A stretch of 64,000 nucleotides of DNA, from positions 248,001 to 312,000 of the IMG/VR virus record IMGVR_UViG_3300028676_000003. One strand, written 5' to 3'. The first letter of the stretch is position 1. Every line of letters starts with the position of its first letter. Of the stretch, positions 19,638 through 54,562 are shown piece after piece. The notes beneath the pieces are model-generated. The model worked only from the letters and a program-made list of their open reading frames with translations, was not told where the DNA came from and did no database searches. Made by a program: the position numbers and the translations under genes.

Positions 19638-20158
19638 GAACAAATTCAGGGTTATTCATCAACGTGTTTGAGACTGACCCTGATACTATCATAATCGAAG
19701 ATGTTGCTCACGCACTAGCACACATGCCAAGATTTGGTGCTCACTTGGATGAATTTTATTCAGTTGCGCAACATAGCGTATATTGCTTTAATCTTGCAAT
19801 AATGCATGGACTTGAATACGGCCTAGCCGCTCTTCTTCACGATGCAAGTGAAGCATATATTCTAGATATGCCAACACCAATCAAGAGACACTTACCTGAT
19901 TATCAGGCGGTGGAACACAAGTTGATGATGGCTATTGCAAAGAAATTTGGTTTCGAGTTTCCATTGAATCCTGTTATTAAAGAAGTTGATAAAGAAGCAT
20001 TGGATTATGAGTATAAGAATATGGTAAACGAAGATACTAAGGGTCTTGACCCTAATTTCGTTATCATGACACCAAAAGAGGCTAAAGCTGAATTCCTAGC
20101 AATGTTTCAATTGATTCAAAAATATCTTGCAAAACAAGAGGTACACGAGGTTGATTAA
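19604..20158 (+). CDS. HD-domain 5'-deoxynucleotidase (YfbR-like)
   Basis: I.DVAHALA..PRF.AH...FYSVAQHS ... LLHDASEAY..D.PTP.K. Confidence 0.85.
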   Translation: MDIYSAPKDTIRTNSGLFINVFETDPDTIIIEDVAHALAHMPRFGAHLDEFYSVAQHSVYCFNLAIMHGLEYGLAALLHDASEAYILDMPTPIKRHLPDYQAVEHKLMMAIAKKFGFEFPLNPVIKEVDKEALDYEYKNMVNEDTKGLDPNFVIMTPKEAKAEFLAMFQLIQKYLAKQEVHEVD

Positions 20159-20481
20159 TCAACAAAAGGATTATGTTTTTGTAGAAATTTGATGTTATCA
20201 TCAGCAATTTCACAATCACCAATAAAAGCAAATACTTCTTCATCTGATAACTTACGCCATTCGTTTTTGGCTTCAGTTTTAGATGAAAAGTGCTTACGGT
20301 GCATCCAACGTTCTACTTTAAGGTAGTTGTTAGATTCGTAGAATTTAAGTAAGACGATTTTATCAGGATTACCTGTTTGAAGCTGTTTTACCCTCTTTTT
20401 CGGGTCGTTCTTGGTAATTCCAATTTTGTGTTTTTCGACACCATCTGTGTCGGTGCATAATAGTAAGTAGACATATCCCAT
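20155..20481 (-). CDS. GIY-YIG nuclease family protein (T5orf172/Mug113-like)
   Basis: GYVYL.......KIGIT.....R..QLQTGNP ... E...H ... EW. Confidence 0.8.
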   Translation of the reverse strand: MGYVYLLLCTDTDGVEKHKIGITKNDPKKRVKQLQTGNPDKIVLLKFYESNNYLKVERWMHRKHFSSKTEAKNEWRKLSDEEVFAFIGDCEIADDNIKFLQKHNPFVD

Positions 20482-20789: not shown

Positions 20790-20872
20790 GCCGTGGTACC
20801 AAAGTGGTTGAATGGGGTGGTCTGCAAAACCATTAGCGAAAGCTCTCGTCGGTTCGAATCCGACCCACGGTT
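20790..20872 (+). tRNA. tRNA-Cys(GCA) with a long variable arm
   Basis: Cloverleaf, loop CTGCAAA, variable hairpin AGCGAAAGCT, T-loop TTCGAAT. Confidence 0.85.
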
Positions 20873-20886
20873 CAAAAAAGAGTATT

Positions 20887-21261
20887 ATGAATGAAATAGA
20901 AATCAAAAAAGACTTATATAAGTCTAAAGCAATGGCTAAATTTAGTCATTACAAAGCTGGTGAATTGTTTTACAATGTTGAACTGATAGACGGAATATAT
21001 CAATTCCCAATCTCAACAGTAGAAGATAAAGAAACTGAAGTGCTTTACGAAGTTAAGGTTGTTTCAAATAACATAGATGGTGAAAAGGCTTCTAAACAAG
21101 CAGAGCCTATCAAGATTATTGTTAATGAGAAACAATTATCAGAAGACTTAGGAGAAACTGAATTTGCTAATGAAATTAAGGGTTCTGAGTTGATTAGATG
21201 GATATTCAAAGCTATCAAGGCTGAAAAGATAAGAAAAATTGGTACCAAGCCAGTTCGTTAA
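20887..21261 (+). CDS. hypothetical protein
   Basis: Start reassigned to ATG 20887 because the track start lies inside tRNA-Cys. Confidence 0.6.
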   Translation: MNEIEIKKDLYKSKAMAKFSHYKAGELFYNVELIDGIYQFPISTVEDKETEVLYEVKVVSNNIDGEKASKQAEPIKIIVNEKQLSEDLGETEFANEIKGSELIRWIFKAIKAEKIRKIGTKPVR

Positions 21262-21315
21262 AACGGAGAAATAATTGGGTATCAAGGATAAAATAGGTAA
21301 CTCAGGTTACCATTT

Positions 21316-21387
21316 GGGAGTGTAGCTCAGAGGAAGAGCGGTTGTGTTACATACAACAGGTCGGGATTTCAAAATTCCCCGTTCCCA
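21316..21387 (+). tRNA. tRNA-Val(TAC)
   Basis: Stem GTTGT/ACAAC, loop GTTACAT. Confidence 0.85.
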
Positions 21388-21565
21388 CAAAAATAACGTA
21401 AACTAAAAAATACTGAATATGGATTTTAATTGTGTATATTGCAAAAAGTCTCACGGGGTTATGACAATAGTTGACGGAAATATGGTTCATCTATCCTGCT
21501 TGAAAGATTATATTGCTGAAAATGAGTATGATAGTGAAGTAGAAGAAATTCTTGAAGAATAAATC

Positions 21566-21639
21566 GTCGAGGTGGTGAAATTGGTAAACACGGTAAGTTC
21601 AAACCTTACATGCTGAGGGTTCGAGTCCCTTCTTCGATA
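21566..21639 (+). tRNA. tRNA-Leu(CAA), short variable loop
   Basis: GTAAG-TTCAAAC-CTTAC, Leu-type D arm, variable region only ATGCT. Confidence 0.85.
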
Positions 21640-21748
21640 CTGTTCTTGCACAAAGTGTAAGGGACTTGGGTGGGTGACTAGAGTCAATATGTTCACTGCA
21701 ATCGCAATCCCTAAAGTTGCGCTCCCCATCTACGGGATGGGGTATTTT

Positions 21749-21822
21749 GGCCCTGTAGCCCAATTGGTAGAGGCATCAGATTTAAATCCTGTATAGTGTG
21801 GGTTCGAATCCCATCGGGGCTA
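21749..21822 (+). tRNA. tRNA-Leu(TAA), short variable loop, weak anticodon stem
   Basis: TCAGA-TTTAAAT-CCTGT, canonical T arm. Confidence 0.7.
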
Positions 21823-21879
21823 CTACATCTCCCTAGGGAGAAGGTGCTGGTTGATGAGCTGACCTTATAGCTCATATTT

Positions 21880-21959
21880 GTCGGGGTGATGAAATTGGTA
21901 GACATGAGGTCCTTAAACGGCCTTGCTTAAGCATACGGGTTCGAGTCCCGTTCCCGATA
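21880..21959 (+). tRNA. tRNA-Leu(TAA)
   Basis: AGGTC-CTTAAAC-GGCCT, variable arm TGCTTAAGCA. Confidence 0.9.
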
Positions 21960-21974
21960 CTAAAAAGAAATAAA

Positions 21975-22190
21975 ATGGGAAAAATATTAGAAATAACAGA
22001 AAAGGTACCACAGGTTGCAAAGCTTCCTGATGGAGTTTACAACGGAACTTGGGGTGGTTATGTAATTGAACTTGTTTATCAAGGTAAAACATTTCAACTT
22101 AAAACAGAAGAAGGTGTCAGAGGTATGGGATTCAAGGTAGTTGTATTTGTAAAGGACGGAGTAGCAACCTATGAAGAAATAAATAACTAA
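21975..22190 (+). CDS. hypothetical protein
   Basis: ORF between tRNAs. Confidence 0.6.
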   Translation: MGKILEITEKVPQVAKLPDGVYNGTWGGYVIELVYQGKTFQLKTEEGVRGMGFKVVVFVKDGVATYEEINN

Positions 22191-22196
22191 AATAAT

Positions 22197-22270
22197 GCAC
22201 GTGTAGCCCAATTGGAAGAGGCGATGGTCTTAGAAGCCATACAGTGTGGGTTCGAATCCCATCATGTGTA
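22197..22270 (+). tRNA. tRNA-Leu(TAG), short variable loop
   Basis: ATGGT-CTTAGAA-GCCAT. Confidence 0.85.
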
Positions 22271-22539
22271 CAAAAACAAAGAAAATGGGAATATTAAAAA
22301 TTCATAATGCAGGATTAACAGGGTATTATTTGGAGCAAACTCTTGGTGGTAAACCTCTTATAGATTCAGGACTTATAATTAGTCAAGAAGACGATGATTC
22401 AGATGAACCATCAACAATTGAGCTTCATTATACTGATGAAAAGGACCTAGAAGCTAAGGTATCAATAATTATTGAAATGTTAACTGATAAATAATAGGAA
22501 ATGTCATTTATTTGTTATACCTTTGTAAAAAATTAAGCT

Positions 22540-22950
22540 ATGGATAATGTAATACTACTAGATTTAGACGGAGTTCTGATAACAACGAAGCCTTGGGAAT
22601 CAGATGTAATTATTGAAGACGGATTTGCCCAATTCAACGAAAAATCAGTTGCAAAGCTAAACGAATACTTGGAATCAACAGGCTACGATATAGTATTAAC
22701 TTCATCAAGACGTTATACGACTGAAATAGACCAAATGAACGAGTTTTTCAAGGCAAGAGGTATCAAAGGACAGATAATTCAATATCTTCCGTTATATGAC
22801 CTAGATTTGCGTTATTCAAGATATGATGAGGTAATGAGATTCATTATGAAGCATAGGCCTGAGAATTATTTGGTAATTGATGATGATAAGTCTCTTGCGA
22901 AGTTAGGTAACAACAAATGGATTAAAACTGACCCAATGATTGGTTTATGA
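22540..22950 (+). CDS. HAD-family phosphatase (HAD_SAK-like)
   Basis: LLDLDGVL, IVLTSSRR, R..E, YLVIDDD, TDP..GL. Confidence 0.8.
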   Translation: MDNVILLDLDGVLITTKPWESDVIIEDGFAQFNEKSVAKLNEYLESTGYDIVLTSSRRYTTEIDQMNEFFKARGIKGQIIQYLPLYDLDLRYSRYDEVMRFIMKHRPENYLVIDDDKSLAKLGNNKWIKTDPMIGL

Positions 22951-23183
22951 TAAGATATTTTTGCGATAACAAAAGACATATTGTATGTTTACCTTATTCC
23001 GTTGAAAATCTTCATAAGATGGCTGAGGACTTGGGTTTAAACAGAAGATGGTTTCATAAAGGGAAAAATAACAATTCTCATTATGATATGCCGATAAAAG
23101 AAATAGCAGTTATTACTGCAAAGTGTGAATTAGTAACCAGTGAAGAAATAGTTGATATTATACGTGGAAGATTTACAAAATAA
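22947..23183 (+). CDS. DUF4031-like protein
   Basis: LH.MA..LGL.RRWFH.......HYD.P. Confidence 0.6.
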   Translation: MIRYFCDNKRHIVCLPYSVENLHKMAEDLGLNRRWFHKGKNNNSHYDMPIKEIAVITAKCELVTSEEIVDIIRGRFTK

Positions 23184-23348
23184 GTTAGAAATACTAAATA
23201 GCAATTATTGGGAACATTTCAAGTTTGCTAAGGACTTGGCAGGGTTTTTAGCCCATGACCATCCTAGAAGACGAAGAATAGAAGAGAAGTTAAACGAAAT
23301 GGTTGATGAAATTCAAGAATTGAATCGACTATTACAAAATAAAAACAA

Positions 23349-23424
23349 GGGAGTATAGCTCAGTTGGTTCAGCAGCGTCTCGTTTACACCGAGAAGGTCG
23401 GGGGTTCGAATCCCTCTACTCCTA
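23349..23424 (+). tRNA. tRNA-Val(TAC)
   Basis: TCTCG-TTTACAC-CGAGA. Confidence 0.9.
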
Positions 23425-23428
23425 CTAA

Positions 23429-23507
23429 AAGATAGTTTCAGCAAGCAAACGGTTAAAAATTTGTCTCATAAACAAACTGAGTGGTTCAATCCCACAAAAC
23501 TATCTTG
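23429..23507 (+). ncRNA. CAGCAA-stem element (skipping-rope-like) enclosing a Met(CAT) anticodon arm and a T arm
   Basis: AAGATAGTT.CAGCAA ... TTTGT-CTCATAA-ACAAA, GTGG-TTCAATC-CCAC ... AACTATCTT-G. Confidence 0.6.
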
Positions 23508-23512
23508 AATTT

Positions 23513-23595
23513 GGCCGAGTGGTGGAATTGGTAGACACGCTAGTTTAAGAAGCTAGTGCTGTAATGGCATGCGGGTTCGAGTCCCGCCTTGGTCA
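23513..23595 (+). tRNA. tRNA-Leu(AAG), A34
   Basis: CTAGT-TTAAGAA-GCTAG, Leu D arm, long variable arm. Confidence 0.85.
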
Positions 23596-23617
23596 CAAAC
23601 GTTTTAAATAAATTATT

Positions 23618-24886
23618 ATGGAAAATACAGAATATGTCTGTGTAATGTTCCCTTATCCTTCAGGAGATGGATTACATGTTGGGCATGTCTATAACTACGC
23701 AATCGTCGATAGTTATTGCCGATGGAAACGTTACAATAAAATTCCAGTCTTTCAACCATTTGGATATGATTCATTTGGATTGCCAGCGGAAAACTACGCA
23801 AAAAAGGTCGGTAGAGACCCAAAAGAAGTCACTTACGAAAATATCGCAAAGTTCCGTAAACAAATGGAACGAATGAACACTCAATATGAAGAATTATTAG
23901 TTACATCTGATGAATCTTACTATGTATGGAGTCAAAGATTATTTACTGAATTACATAGCAGAGGGTTAGCCTACCAAAAGATGGGTCCTGTAAATCATTG
24001 TTCAAGCTGTGAAACAGTCTTGGCTAATGAACAAGTTAAGGACGACCATTGTGAAAGATGTGGTACAAGAGTAGAAATCAAAGATTTAAACCAATGGTAT
24101 TTCAAAATTACTGACTATAAGCAACGATTAATTGATAACTTGGATAAGATTGATTATCCTGAGAAAACAAAGAAACAGCAATTGCATTGGTTAGAGAACT
24201 TAAATGATTGGTGTGTTTCAAGACAGCGAAAATGGGGAACTCCAATACCGTTGATTGATTCAGAAGACACCTTAGATACATTCGTTGATAGTTCATTCTA
24301 TTTTTTAAGATACTTGGACCCAAATAACTTAGAAGAATTGGTTGATATCAATAAAGCTAAGCAAGTTGACTTATATGTTGGTGGAAACGAACATGCTTGT
24401 ATGCACTTGATTTATGCTAGGTTTATCACGATGTTCTTACATGATTGTGGTTATATCCCTTTTGATGAGCCTTTTAAGAAGGTAATTCACCAAGGAATGA
24501 TTACTCATAATGGAGAAAAAATGTCCAAGTCAAAAGGCAACGTAATAAATCCTGATGATTATGACCCTGATGAATTGAGGTTATATTCAATGTTTATCGG
24601 CCATTATTTTGACGGTGGAGATTGGGATGATTCAAAGATTAGCGGAATTAGACGTTTTATTGGAAGATTTGGTAAATGGACAAATGAATCTACTCAAGAA
24701 GGTGAAACTATTGACTTAACAGCATTTAAAGAGACTATTAATGGTTATGTAATATCGTTTAAGTTCAATAAGGTTGTTAGTACATTCATGGAGTTTTACA
24801 ACAAGAATAAGAACAAAACATTAAGTGTATCAACAGCTAACGATTTGATTGAAATCTTACGTGTGTTTGCACCGAGTTTTAAATAA
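23618..24886 (+). CDS. leuS: minimal leucyl-tRNA synthetase (no CP1 editing domain, truncated C-terminus)
   Basis: MFPYPSG.GLHVGH, GYDSFGLPAEN, Zn knuckle, DWCVSRQR.WGTPIP, DTFVDSS.YFLRY, GG.EHA.MHL.YARF and KMSKS; only 422 aa. Confidence 0.9.
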   Translation: MENTEYVCVMFPYPSGDGLHVGHVYNYAIVDSYCRWKRYNKIPVFQPFGYDSFGLPAENYAKKVGRDPKEVTYENIAKFRKQMERMNTQYEELLVTSDESYYVWSQRLFTELHSRGLAYQKMGPVNHCSSCETVLANEQVKDDHCERCGTRVEIKDLNQWYFKITDYKQRLIDNLDKIDYPEKTKKQQLHWLENLNDWCVSRQRKWGTPIPLIDSEDTLDTFVDSSFYFLRYLDPNNLEELVDINKAKQVDLYVGGNEHACMHLIYARFITMFLHDCGYIPFDEPFKKVIHQGMITHNGEKMSKSKGNVINPDDYDPDELRLYSMFIGHYFDGGDWDDSKISGIRRFIGRFGKWTNESTQEGETIDLTAFKETINGYVISFKFNKVVSTFMEFYNKNKNKTLSVSTANDLIEILRVFAPSFK

Positions 24887-39023: not shown

Positions 39024-39094
39024 ACTTCTGTCGTCTAAGTGTTAGGATGCCCTCGTTGTAGAGGGTGATAGTGGTTCAAATCCATTCGGAAGTG
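39024..39094 (+). ncRNA. Glu-type tRNA body with a 6-nt anticodon loop
   Basis: ACTTCTG/CGGAAGT, CCCTC-GTTGTA-GAGGG. Confidence 0.65.
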
Positions 39095-39240
39095 CAAATA
39101 CTGACCTCCACTTCAGTAATTATTTCGTTTTTTAGAGGTGGCTCCCTTTCCACAATTGTGGATATAACCAAAAATTGCTGTGGCAGACCACGGGCATCTG
39201 ATAGGTCAACTATCTATACAGGGGGCGAAACTAAATGTTT

Positions 39241-50253: not shown

Positions 50254-50326
50254 TCCGTGTTAGAGCAGTCAGGTAGCTCGCTCCCGTGTGAGGGAGAGGT
50301 CAGGGGTTCGAATCCTTTACACGGTA
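50254..50326 (+). ncRNA. initiator-like tRNA body with a 6-nt anticodon loop
   Basis: 1:72 mismatch, D stem GAGC/GCTC, CTCCC-GTGTGA-GGGAG. Confidence 0.65.
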
Positions 50327-50542
50327 CTAATTTTTACTAGACATATTAATTAAATTCGGGAGCAATACATATAGTATTGAATAGGTGGAAACCCTTATGC
50401 TCCCACTAGGCTTCGTAATTAGGAAATATGGATGCGGTTAAAAGAAACGACCAAAGATAAGGTTTCACGGCAAAAGGCTCTATTCGTTAACCAGCGAGCT
50501 TTTACTTATCTTTGGAAATTTCAAAAAAAAATGACAAAAGGC

Positions 50543-54451: not shown

Positions 54452-54524
54452 GCGAGTGTAGCTCAGTTGGCAGAGCACCTGATTACCAATTAGGTTGTCG
54501 TGGGTTCGAATCCCATCACTCGCT
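54452..54524 (+). tRNA. tRNA-Gly(ACC), A34
   Basis: GCG-start, U73 Gly body; CCTGA-TTACCAA-TTAGG. Confidence 0.85.
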
Positions 54525-54562
54525 CTCTTGACTTTTTGGTACCATCTAGTATATTTATATAC

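What the first reader, a model, noticed from the sequence alone, without database searches (positions are those of the whole stretch)
21566..24886. Minimal editing-less LeuRS beside short-variable-loop tRNA-Leu: a possible orthogonal pair
The 422-aa LeuRS joins KKQQLHW directly to L.DWCVSRQR (CP1 editing domain absent), has almost no CP2, and ends before the C-terminal domain that normally contacts the tRNA elbow and variable arm. Three of the five neighbouring tRNA-Leu (21566, 21749, 22197) lack the long arm typical of bacterial tRNA-Leu. Inference: a co-evolved, possibly error-prone phage pair.
Basis: partly seen in the sequence, partly recalled or inferred. Interest (0 to 1): 0.7.

Follow-up and report, generated by a model that had tools for sequence, protein, structure and literature searches.

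The report
Stripped-down phage LeuRS among tRNA-Leu genes
A 368-kb peat phage encodes a very small leucyl-tRNA synthetase (422 aa, with no editing domain and no C-terminal tRNA-binding domain) inside a cluster of tRNA-Leu genes, some of which lack the usual long arm; both features are real and conserved, but they occur independently of each other in other phages, so they are not a private matched pair.

Summary
It lacks the CP1 editing domain, a 47-aa CP2-region insert, the leucine-specific domain and the C-terminal domain. The truncation is genuine: the ORF ends at TAA, the genome reads as code 11, and no separate domain is encoded elsewhere. Three neighbouring tRNA-Leu have 5-nt variable loops, one has a stub arm and one a full arm.

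The enzyme belongs to a large, tightly conserved family (>120 clusters, 60 viral loci) that is essentially absent from cellular genomes.

The "co-evolved orthogonal pair" reading fails on distribution:
- The same short-arm tRNA-Leu type occurs in more than 100 cultured phages and 41 further viral contigs with no LeuRS (0 of 10 complete genomes).
- Two complete huge-phage genomes have the minimal LeuRS but only long or stub-arm tRNA-Leu.
- The short tRNAs keep every known bacterial LeuRS identity element.

Best reading: this is an auxiliary, editing-less LeuRS that does not discriminate by variable arm. It tops up charging of the phage's own tRNA-Leu set, which matches 97% of the phage's Leu codons. 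The arm-less tRNA-Leu are a separate, under-described tRNA type found across many phages.

The parts
21566..21640 (+). tRNA-Leu(CAA), 75 nt, 5-nt variable loop, 3-bp D stem with 11-nt D loop, G1.U72, A73. Its D-arm is nearly identical to that of the long-arm Leu(AAG).
   Evidence: ARAGORN; Rfam 59.1 bits; alignment. No blastn match in GenBank phages.
21749..21823 (+). tRNA-Leu(UAA), 75 nt, 5-nt variable loop, 'Moogle-type' D-arm (AGCCCAATTGGTAGAGGC), G1.U72, A73.
   Evidence: Rfam 54.2 bits.
21880..21960 (+). tRNA-Leu(UAA), 81 nt, 10-nt variable region able to form only a 2-bp stub hairpin. It is an intermediate between the long and short forms.
   Evidence: Rfam 44.3 bits. A similar 80-nt stub form, Leu(AAG), occurs in G005.
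22197..22271 (+). tRNA-Leu(UAG), 75 nt, 5-nt variable loop, Moogle-type D-arm. It is 76-83% identical over its full length to annotated tRNA-Leu of cultured phages.
   Evidence: Rfam 57.3 bits.
22540..22950 (+). 136-aa HAD phosphatase of the RNA-repair 'Swiss Army Knife' type (HAD_SAK_2), lying between the tRNA-Leu genes and the LeuRS.
   Evidence: Pfam PF18143, 2.2e-23.
22947..23183 (+). 78-aa DUF4031 protein.
   Evidence: Pfam PF13223, 1.9e-08.
23349..23425 (+). tRNA-Val(UAC).
   Evidence: Rfam 61.4 bits.
23513..23596 (+). tRNA-Leu(AAG), 84 nt, normal long variable arm (3-bp stem), A73. It ends 21 nt upstream of the LeuRS ATG.
   Evidence: Rfam 52.5 bits.
23618..24886 (+). Minimal bacterial-type LeuRS, 422 aa: Rossmann catalytic core, ZN1 zinc finger and a shortened helical anticodon-binding domain.
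23675..23686 (+). HIGH signature (H20-V-G-H23). H20, G22 and H23 are invariant in the family.
23999..24061 (+). ZN1 zinc-finger cysteines C128, C131, C145 and C148 (at least 90% conserved).
   Evidence: aligned to the E. coli ZN1 region.
24191..24208 (+). Site of the missing CP1 editing domain (L192-D197, 'LENLND'). About 200 residues are present here in cellular LeuRS.
   Evidence: No PF13603 in the protein or the genome.
24263..24268 (+). Site of a 47-residue deletion relative to the nearest cellular LeuRS (CP2-region insert between 'PIPL' and 'DTLDTF').
24503..24532 (+). Pentapeptide THNGE in place of the leucine-specific domain, followed by KMSKS (K301-S305).
   Evidence: Analogous to the GKDG linker of M. 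mobile LeuRS.

Best explanation
The ORF is a phage-specific, extremely reduced but catalytically complete LeuRS. It most likely works as an auxiliary charging enzyme for tRNA-Leu during infection. It keeps everything needed to make Leu-AMP and transfer it to A76: HIGH, KMSKS, the Leu pocket, ZN1 and a helical anticodon-binding domain. It has lost post-transfer editing (CP1) and the C-terminal elbow clamp. It also has no leucine-specific domain, the module that measures the variable arm. It should therefore charge tRNA-Leu whatever the arm length, covering the phage's long, stub and short forms and probably host tRNA-Leu too, with lower fidelity than a cellular LeuRS. The phage supplies tRNA-Leu for exactly its four dominant, AT-rich Leu codons and adds extra LeuRS capacity for its most used amino acid. 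The arm-less tRNA-Leu are a separate feature. They are a conserved, structurally selected tRNA type shared by many unrelated phages. They keep all bacterial Leu identity elements and are charged by host LeuRS in the many phages that have no LeuRS of their own. Why the arm was lost is inferred only; escape from host nucleases that cut the variable arm of type-II tRNAs is the most attractive idea. Shown here: the anatomy, family conservation, phage restriction, distribution tables, tRNA covariation and the codon match. Inferred: catalytic activity, indifference to the arm, error rate and the nuclease-escape rationale.
For: Catalytic completeness: HVGH, KMSKS, D51, E258/H259/H263 and the four ZN1 cysteines are invariant or at least 90% conserved in 20 family members at 65-77% identity. 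The model fits LeuRS structures at Z 34-37 and is closest in architecture to the CP1-less M. mobile LeuRS (TM 0.90). Family: more than 120 clusters of 410-437 aa at 64-94% identity on contigs up to 472 kb, and 60 IMG/VR loci. Among 185,579 species genomes there is only one 2.9-kb MAG contig. Link to tRNA-Leu: 15 of 22 tRNA-bearing loci have tRNA-Leu within 10 kb. Leu is 59 of 190 nearby tRNAs against 6 of 62 genome-wide. About 40 of those 59 are long-arm. Independence from short arms: G001 (482 kb) and G005 (519 kb), both complete, have the LeuRS, and their tRNA-Leu are 80-88 nt only. Short arms without LeuRS: 183 GenBank phage records match, and none of those genera has a LeuRS hit. Four were verified by ARAGORN. 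42 IMG/VR contigs carry the signature, only the phage's own duplicate has the LeuRS, and 0 of 10 complete records do. Identity elements U8, A14, A15, G18, G19, U48 and A73 are invariant and equal the E. coli LeuRS determinants; the long arm is dispensable (PMC9976931). tRNA function: 16 of 17 stem pairs show compensatory changes. Precedent: M. mobile LeuRS lacks CP1 and LSD yet is active, cross-charges E. coli tRNA-Leu and mischarges Ile; the LSD senses variable-arm size (PMC3643597). Codons: TTA, CTT, TTG and CTA make up 97% of Leu codons and match anticodons UAA x2, AAG, CAA and UAG; Leu is the top amino acid at 8.3%. Context: an RNA-repair HAD gene lies in the same island.
Against: No biochemical or expression data exist; only DNA runs from peat hold this sequence. 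From my own recollection of published deletion work, removing the C-terminal domain abolishes aminoacylation by E. coli LeuRS, so activity of a natural C-domain-less enzyme is not guaranteed. About 60% of related loci have no tRNA within 10 kb of the LeuRS, so the synteny is loose. The nearest tRNA is Leu in only 9 of 22 loci. Pfam does not recognise the anticodon-binding domain by sequence. Host LeuRS charging of short-arm tRNA-Leu is inferred from distribution and has not been measured. The host is unknown.
Confidence: 0.6

Rival explanations
1. One reading: the minimal LeuRS and the arm-less tRNA-Leu co-evolved as a private (orthogonal) pair, in which the enzyme is specialised for arm-less tRNAs that host LeuRS handles poorly.
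For: They are neighbours in this window. 11 of 16 related loci that have tRNA-Leu near the LeuRS include at least one short form. The enzyme lacks the LSD, which in E. coli LeuRS favours large variable-arm loops, so LSD-bearing host enzymes might disfavour arm-less tRNAs.
Against: Three of the four co-occurrence combinations are documented here (both features together, LeuRS only, short arm only). LeuRS without short tRNA-Leu: complete genomes G001 and G005. Short tRNA-Leu without LeuRS: more than 100 cultured phages and 0 of 10 complete IMG/VR genomes. The short tRNAs keep all bacterial Leu identity elements. Most tRNA-Leu next to the enzyme are long-arm, including its immediate neighbour. 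The absence of the LSD is shared with near cellular relatives, so it is not an adaptation to these tRNAs.
Confidence: 0.07
2. A soft version of the pair idea: the phage enzyme is not exclusive but is relatively better than LSD-bearing host LeuRS on arm-less or stub-arm tRNA-Leu. In phages that carry both, it would raise the charged fraction of nuclease-resistant tRNA-Leu.
For: LSD-containing LeuRS prefer tRNAs with a large variable-arm loop, and LSD-less enzymes show no preference. Host defences (retron-Eco7, Septu) cleave the variable loop of a type-II tRNA, and T5 tRNA-Tyr escapes through a distinct loop (PMC13096335). An RNA-repair gene lies in the island.
Against: The host LeuRS type is unknown. 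No nuclease targeting the tRNA-Leu arm has been shown in bacteria in what I read. The distribution shows that neither feature needs the other.
Confidence: 0.15
3. The protein is not a working tRNA-charging enzyme. It could be a LeuRS-derived paralog with another role, such as leucine adenylation for another acceptor, tRNA-Leu or mRNA binding, or interference with host LeuRS or leucine sensing.
For: It lacks the C-terminal domain, which from memory is needed by E. coli LeuRS. It scores below the NCBIfam equivalog cut-off. Most related loci are not next to tRNAs. The same genome has a 265-aa GluRS core resembling the non-canonical GluQRS class in size.
Against: All aminoacylation motifs, including KMSKS and the tRNA-side helical domain, are conserved under strong purifying selection across more than 120 clusters. 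tRNA-Leu genes are enriched around it. The CP1-less, LSD-less M. mobile enzyme is a bona fide LeuRS.
Confidence: 0.15
4. Artefact: a misassembled or decaying gene fragment and pseudo-tRNAs.
For: The sequence derives from a metagenome and no expression data exist.
Against: The same architecture recurs in more than 120 independent clusters and 60 viral contigs. The ORF is intact and the AF2 model is confident. The tRNAs show compensatory covariation and pass Rfam thresholds. The sequence is present in several independent peat runs.
Confidence: 0.01

Closest known systems
Mycoplasma mobile LeuRS (PDB 3ziu; Yan et al. 2013, PMC3643597)
   Same: It is a bacterial-type LeuRS that naturally lacks CP1 (short linker) and the leucine-specific domain (tetrapeptide GKDG; THNGE here). 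It is the best Foldseek match (TM 0.90). It is active, does not discriminate among tRNA-Leu, and mischarges Ile.
   Different: The M. mobile enzyme (637-aa chain) keeps the CP2-region insert, the full anticodon-binding domain and the C-terminal domain, and it is the cell's only LeuRS. The phage enzyme is 422 aa, lacks those parts and the N-terminal ~30 residues, and is auxiliary. Its sequence is no closer to M. mobile (37% identity) than to E. coli or T. thermophilus (40%), so the CP1 loss is independent.
Canonical bacterial LeuRS (E. coli 4aq7, T. thermophilus 1h3n; TIGR00396)
   Same: Same catalytic core, ZN1, HIGH and KMSKS motifs and Leu pocket, with 40% identity over aligned positions and Z 34-37. 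The nearest cellular sequences are 45-54% identical over the N-terminal half (Peribacteria, Clostridia, Gemmatimonadota).
   Different: About 395 residues are missing: the N-terminal extension, CP1, the 47-aa insert and the last 94 aa. It scores below the equivalog cut-off.
Arm-less tRNA-Leu of cultured phages (Mooglevirus/Felixounavirus, Bacillus phage P59, Vibrio phage V05, Streptomyces phage Tomas)
   Same: Same tRNA type as window 21749 and 22197: identical D-arm signature, 4-5-nt variable loop, G1.U72, A73 and Leu anticodons. tRNAscan isotype models rank Leu first for the Sf14 copies (PMC12482277).
   Different: Those phages are 87-160 kb, encode no LeuRS, and in the fetched tRNA arrays carry only short tRNA-Leu. 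This phage mixes short, stub and long forms.
Animal mitochondrial tRNA-Leu
   Same: It is the textbook case of tRNA-Leu without a long variable arm. Its identity rests on A73 and A14 (PMC9976931).
   Different: It is organellar, often structurally degenerate, and charged by a dedicated mitochondrial LeuRS that still has a C-terminal domain. The phage tRNAs have fully canonical D/T-loop cores.
Phage T5 tRNA-Tyr with an altered variable loop that resists retron-Eco7 (PMC13096335)
   Same: A phage-encoded type-II tRNA whose variable region differs from the host's, in a tRNA array with homing-endonuclease-like genes. A T5orf172/GIY-YIG gene lies at window 20155-20481.
   Different: Nuclease escape has been shown for tRNA-Tyr only. 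For tRNA-Leu it is my inference.

Membership tests
Bacterial-type leucyl-tRNA synthetase (TIGR00396 leuS_bact) | Class Ia Rossmann core with HIGH and KMSKS signatures and Leu-pocket residues | tested here: met
   HVGH 20-23, KMSKS 301-305, D51 and E258/H259/H263 are invariant in the family. LeuRS models far outscore Val, Ile and Met models.
Bacterial-type leucyl-tRNA synthetase (TIGR00396 leuS_bact) | CP1 editing domain inserted after the ZN1 domain | tested here: not met
   No PF13603 in the protein or the genome. The alignment skips about 190-200 residues.
Bacterial-type leucyl-tRNA synthetase (TIGR00396 leuS_bact) | C-terminal tRNA-elbow-binding domain | tested here: not met
   The model ends at E. 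coli residue ~769 of 860. The last 94 residues of the Peribacteria LeuRS have no counterpart. The ORF ends at TAA with the next gene 6 nt later.
Bacterial-type leucyl-tRNA synthetase (TIGR00396 leuS_bact) | Score above the curated equivalog cut-off | tested here: not met
   399.5 bits against a 548.4 cut-off.
Bacterial-type leucyl-tRNA synthetase (TIGR00396 leuS_bact) | Leucylation of tRNA-Leu | not testable with these tools
   Needs an aminoacylation assay or complementation.
Naturally CP1-less LeuRS (M. mobile type) | CP1 and LSD replaced by short linkers while the enzyme stays catalytically complete | tested here: met
   Junctions LENLND and THNGE. 3ziu is the top Foldseek hit. Compare.
Naturally CP1-less LeuRS (M. 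mobile type) | Retains the full anticodon-binding and C-terminal domains | tested here: not met
   The 3ziu chain range aligned is 34-550 of a longer chain and the phage protein ends earlier. PF08264 is not detected.
Orthogonal aaRS/tRNA pair | Enzyme and tRNA are co-inherited (each found only with the other) | tested here: not met
   LeuRS without short tRNA-Leu: G001 and G005. Short tRNA-Leu without LeuRS.
Orthogonal aaRS/tRNA pair | The tRNA lacks the identity elements used by the host synthetase | tested here: not met
   A73, A14, A15:U48, G18G19 and the T-loop are all invariant and equal the E. coli LeuRS determinants.
Orthogonal aaRS/tRNA pair | No cross-charging in either direction | not testable with these tools
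   Needs kinetics with host and phage enzymes.
tRNA-Leu (functional, class-I-like body) | Cloverleaf maintained by compensatory change, Leu anticodon, A73 | tested here: met
   16 of 17 pairs show double changes in 27 sequences. All 46 signature tRNAs carry Leu anticodons. RF00005 scores are 54-59 bits.
tRNA-Leu (canonical class II) | Long variable arm (stem-loop, at least ~11 nt) | tested here: not met
   The variable loop is 5 nt in 21566, 21749 and 22197, and a 10-nt stub in 21880. The feature is met only by 23513.

The most novel reading that the evidence does not exclude
Huge phages run a semi-private leucine channel. Host defences or phage-induced shut-off destroy or disable host type-II tRNA-Leu or host LeuRS. 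The phage replaces both: with tRNA-Leu stripped of the vulnerable variable arm, and with a LeuRS stripped of every module that needs that arm or that inhibitors can target (CP1, the site trapped by benzoxaborole-type compounds, and the LSD). The 265-aa GluRS core in the same genome would be a second instance of a general strategy of domain-minimised phage synthetases.
Probability: 0.12. Interest if true: 0.8.

Novelty: new variant of a known kind. Interest (0 to 1): 0.5.

Why it matters
At 422 residues this family is, as far as I could find, the smallest natural LeuRS architecture. It is also a natural experiment on which LeuRS domains are dispensable: it goes beyond M. mobile by also dropping the C-terminal tRNA clamp. 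If it is active, it matters for work on synthetase evolution and 'urzymes', for compact translation parts, and for understanding why huge phages carry synthetases. Separately, the survey shows that arm-less tRNA-Leu are common and conserved across unrelated phages. A recent authoritative review states that tRNA-Leu carry the long arm everywhere except animal mitochondria. That gap is directly testable in cultured E. coli, Shigella and Citrobacter phages. It may connect to newly found defences that cut the variable arm of type-II tRNAs.

Tried and rejected
Recoding as an explanation for the short ORF is rejected. The stop is TAA and code 11 gives 92% coding, despite a CTA-anticodon tRNA elsewhere in the genome.

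A split enzyme is rejected: no CP1 or Anticodon_1 domain is encoded anywhere in the genome.

A conserved partner gene next to the LeuRS was not found. The best neighbour cluster occurs in 10 of 60 loci and not in this genome.

blastn of the CAA short tRNA against GenBank phages gave no match.

The first viral pattern scan returned 0 because I mis-spaced the anticodon.

L084 looked like a CP1-less Peribacteria LeuRS from its match range, but it is a normal 817-aa enzyme.

Testing whether the nearest tRNA is Leu against the local background was not significant (p = 0.22). The enrichment only appears against the genome-wide share.

Five literature searches found no description of a truncated phage LeuRS or of arm-less phage tRNA-Leu. 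The library is incomplete, so this is absence of evidence only.

No RNA runs hold the sequence.

I did not run complex prediction, because a protein-RNA job gets no verdict and would not separate the hypotheses.

I did not build a phylogeny, because the database proteins carry no taxon names.

Full report
**1. What is there**

The window lies at 248,001-312,000 of a single 368,549-bp IMG/VR virus record. The record is 33.6% G+C, is rated 100% complete by CheckV, and comes from peat metagenomes. The genome carries 62 tRNA genes, 40 of them in the window.

The finding's region holds the following genes, all on the + strand:
- tRNA-Leu(CAA), 21566-21640
- tRNA-Leu(UAA), 21749-21823
- tRNA-Leu(UAA), 21880-21960
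- tRNA-Leu(UAG), 22197-22271
- an RNA-repair-type HAD gene (HAD_SAK_2), 22540-22950
- a DUF4031 gene, 22947-23183
- tRNA-Val(UAC), 23349-23425
- tRNA-Leu(AAG), 23513-23596
- 21 nt further on, a 422-aa ORF, 23618-24886, followed 6 nt later by an RmlD-like reductase gene

All eight tRNAs in 20,790-23,596 pass the Rfam tRNA model at 44-61 bits, against a gathering score of 29.

**2. The enzyme**

The ORF is a bacterial-type LeuRS. TIGR00396 scores 2.9e-119, well above the Val, Ile and Met models, but in four separate stretches and below the equivalog cut-off (399.5 against 548.4 bits).

Against E. coli LeuRS the HMMER alignment skips three blocks, and an explicit comparison with a near cellular relative (an 817-aa Candidatus Peribacteria LeuRS, L084) defines the losses:
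- the N-terminal ~30 residues
- about 200 residues of CP1, at the junction ...HWLE|NLNDW...
- a 47-residue insert between 'PIPL' and 'DTLDTF' (the CP2 region)
- the last 94 residues

[quoted passage not shown] The stretch 'HQG-IT--G-KMSKSKGN' aligns without a gap. That absence was therefore probably inherited from the cellular donor lineage and did not arise in the phage.

The AlphaFold model built on a 20-sequence family alignment is confident (pLDDT 88, pTM 0.87). Its best Foldseek match is the naturally CP1-less M. mobile LeuRS (TM 0.90). By VIA-align all 422 residues superpose on E. coli LeuRS 30-769 and T. thermophilus 28-789 (Z 34-37, about 40% identity). The helical anticodon-binding domain is thus largely retained, even though Pfam does not detect it by sequence. 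What is missing at the end is the C-terminal elbow-binding domain.

The catalytic signatures are intact and invariant or nearly so across the family: H20-V-G-H23, K301-M-S-K-S305, D51, E258/H259/H263 and the four ZN1 cysteines.

The truncation is not an artefact of the genetic code or of gene splitting. The stop is TAA. Code 11 already gives 92% stop-to-stop coding, and TAA ends 237 of 279 long ORFs. Neither the LeuRS editing domain nor an Anticodon_1 domain is encoded anywhere else in the genome.

**3. The family**

The 5.8-billion-protein search returned more than 120 clusters of 410-437 aa at 64-94% identity, on contigs up to 472 kb. At 50% clustering they collapse to one representative. 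The next neighbours are CP1-less forms of 530-640 aa that still have a recognisable anticodon-binding domain, then full-length LeuRS at 45-52% identity.

Sixty IMG/VR loci encode the minimal form. GenBank holds it in 635-kb and 735-kb 'uncultured phage' records.

In one genome per each of 185,579 prokaryote species, the only member is a 2.9-kb contig binned with a Bacteroidota MAG. Everything else found there is ordinary LeuRS. This is therefore a phage-specific, strongly conserved protein family and not a decaying fragment.

No neighbouring gene is conserved with it; the best cluster occurs in 10 of 60 loci.

**4. The tRNAs**

The three 75-nt tRNA-Leu have a 5-nt variable loop but otherwise the hallmarks of tRNA-Leu: a 3-bp D stem with an 11-nt D loop, and A73. 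The CAA gene has a D-arm almost identical to that of the long-arm AAG gene. The UAA and UAG genes are paralogs of each other. The 81-nt UAA gene has a 10-nt variable region that can form only a 2-bp stub, so it is an intermediate form.

Across 27 short tRNA-Leu from this phage, related huge phages and four cultured phages, 16 of 17 stem pairs show compensatory double substitutions. A73 is invariant. Pair 1-72 is G.U in 20 sequences and G-C in 7.

U8, A14, A15, G18, G19, the last variable-loop base U (the Levitt partner of A15) and A73 are invariant in short and long forms alike. According to the Giege and Eriani review, these are exactly the elements E. coli LeuRS uses. The review also says that the anticodon and long arm are dispensable, and that variants lacking both arms are still charged (PMC9976931).

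**5. Testing the 'co-evolved pair'**

Short without LeuRS:
- blastn of the UAG tRNA found 183 GenBank phage records, 100 of them covering at least 80% of the tRNA. They are annotated tRNA-Leu and come from Mooglevirus/Felixounavirus, Vibrio, Bacillus, Streptomyces, Mycobacterium and other phages.
- ARAGORN confirmed 76-79-nt tRNA-Leu (CCA included) with 4-7-nt variable loops in Citrobacter phage Michonne, Bacillus phage P59, Vibrio phage V05 and Streptomyces phage Tomas. In the same arrays Ser and Tyr tRNAs keep their long arms.
- None of those genera appears among the 45 records with any LeuRS or MetRS-like hit.
- A strict exact-match signature (D-arm, anticodon position, short spacing, T-loop) found 42 IMG/VR contigs. 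All 46 tRNAs carrying it have Leu anticodons.
- Searching the 42 whole records for the enzyme found it only in this phage's own near-duplicate. None of the 10 records at least 90% complete (41-254 kb) has it.

LeuRS without short:
- For two 100%-complete huge-phage genomes with the minimal LeuRS (G001, 482 kb; G005, 519 kb with terminal repeats) I located every RF00005 match and fetched all of those regions.
- Their tRNA-Leu are 83-84 nt (G001) and 80-88 nt (G005). None is arm-less.

Around the LeuRS in related phages, 19 tRNA-Leu are short and about 40 are long. Leu is enriched among nearby tRNAs (59 of 190 against 6 of 62 genome-wide), but the nearest tRNA is Leu in only 9 of 22 loci, and about 60% of loci have no tRNA nearby.

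So the enzyme is loosely tied to the tRNA-Leu cluster as a whole and has no specific tie to the arm-less members.

**6. Mechanism**

M. mobile LeuRS is the closest studied precedent. It lacks CP1 and the LSD, is active (kcat/Km about a tenth of E. coli LeuRS), charges E. coli and Mycoplasma tRNA-Leu equally, and mischarges Ile. The LSD, when present, is the part that senses variable-arm size (PMC3643597).

By analogy, the phage enzyme should activate leucine, charge tRNA-Leu whatever the arm, and lack post-transfer editing. Whether it copes without the C-terminal clamp is the main uncertainty. I recall, but did not verify here, that deleting the clamp inactivates E. coli LeuRS. Conservation of the family argues that the phage enzyme does cope.

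The phage's Leu codons are TTA 40%, CTT 28%, TTG 16% and CTA 13%. These match its anticodons UAA x2, AAG, CAA and UAG. Leu is its most frequent amino acid, at 8.3%. That fits a supply function: extra adaptors for AT-rich Leu codons plus extra charging capacity. Al-Shayeb et al. already proposed in general terms that huge-phage synthetases 'charge their own tRNA variants' (PMC7162821).

Why phages drop the arm is open. [quoted passage not shown] The island here also holds an RNA-repair HAD gene and a T5orf172/GIY-YIG gene. Escape from arm-directed nucleases is therefore a reasonable but untested idea.

**7. Comparison and novelty**

The enzyme works like, and is derived from, bacterial LeuRS. 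It fails the family's domain-architecture and score criteria (no CP1, no C-terminal domain, below cut-off). It goes further than the M. mobile type.

I found no paper describing it; JGI simply labels it leucyl-tRNA synthetase.

The arm-less phage tRNA-Leu are annotated in GenBank and were scored as Leu by isotype models in the Sf14 study, which does not mention the variable loop (PMC12482277). A 2023 review states that the long arm is universal outside animal mitochondria.

I therefore rate the finding as a new variant of a known kind. It comprises two real, conserved and under-described features, but the specific 'orthogonal pair' story is not supported.

**8. Verdict**

| Question | Verdict |
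|---|---|
| Observation | Confirmed |
| Best explanation | Auxiliary, editing-less LeuRS that does not discriminate by variable arm, serving the phage's tRNA-Leu set (confidence 0.6) |
| Interest | 0.5 |

Noticed in passing
window:34105-34902 (+): A second domain-minimised synthetase-like gene. It is a 265-aa GluRS catalytic core (TIGR00464, 204.8 bits, below the 290 cut-off; GluQRS models score 115 bits) with no anticodon-binding domain. It sits just after the tRNA-Glu/Gln/Asp/Ala cluster. It could be a minimal GluRS or a GluQRS-like tRNA modifier.
   Followed up: partly
window:20790-20873; genome 235169-235253, 236674-236757, 237373-237460 (upstream of the window); also G001 and G005 (L069-L078): tRNAs that are normally class I appear in a second copy with a long variable arm. 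Here these are Cys(GCA) 84 nt, His(GUG) 85, Ile(GAU) 84 and Asn(GUU) 88. In two other huge phages they are Asn 88/92, His 87/90, Lys 86/92, Glu 86/87, Thr 86, Trp 84/86, Met 86 and Gln 85, each beside a normal ~74-nt copy. This is the mirror image of the arm-less tRNA-Leu, it recurs across the clade, and it is unexplained.
   Followed up: partly
genome 228804-228879 (outside the window); two more in G001: A tRNA with anticodon CUA (amber-suppressor type), although the genome reads well in code 11 and TAG ends only 19 of 279 long ORFs. Stage-specific or partial TAG read-through was not examined.
   Followed up: partly
window:31130-31201, 54452-54525, 23513-23596: A34 anticodons that are unusual in bacteria: His(AUG), Gly(ACC) and Leu(AAG). 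This may imply A-to-I editing of more than tRNA-Arg, or unmodified A34 decoding.
   Followed up: no
window:33534-33619; also 39024-39095 and 50254-50327: ARAGORN calls an 86-nt tRNA with a 4-base anticodon (AGGA, 8-nt loop), and two tRNAs with 2-base anticodons (6-nt loops). These may be frameshift-type tRNAs or mis-folded calls. A similar 'AGAA' tRNA occurs in G005.
   Followed up: no
window:36848-36920: A further 73-nt 'tRNA-Leu(CAA)' of a different kind. It has a class-I body with a 4-bp D stem (GTAGCTCAGTTGGTAGAGC), A73 and an irregular anticodon stem that could also fold with a 6-nt loop. Its Leu identity is doubtful.
   Followed up: no
A3 alignment (27 short tRNA-Leu); The first acceptor pair is G1.U72 in most phage tRNA-Leu, both short and long (20 of 27 short; 28 of 46 signature tRNAs), and otherwise G-C. 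A wobble first pair next to A73 is conserved across unrelated phages, and its purpose is unknown.
   Followed up: partly
window:20155-20481 (-) and 22540-23183 (+): A T5orf172/MUG113 (GIY-YIG-like) gene, a HAD_SAK_2 RNA-repair phosphatase and a DUF4031 gene are interleaved with the tRNA genes. This resembles the homing-endonuclease and repair content of T4/T5-type tRNA regions.
   Followed up: no
G001:417828-417973, G001:7775-7880, G005:419546-419662, G005:459026-459122, L080 (G005:37497-37585): Several Rfam tRNA matches in related huge phages are 97-146 nt long, and one ARAGORN call has a 16-nt intron. These are probably intron-containing or otherwise interrupted tRNA genes.
   Followed up: no
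P0041 (616 aa): One family member is fused to a dephospho-CoA kinase / AAA_18 kinase domain (PF01121, PF13238), and a few others are 450-492 aa. The minimal LeuRS therefore sometimes acquires extra modules.
   Followed up: no
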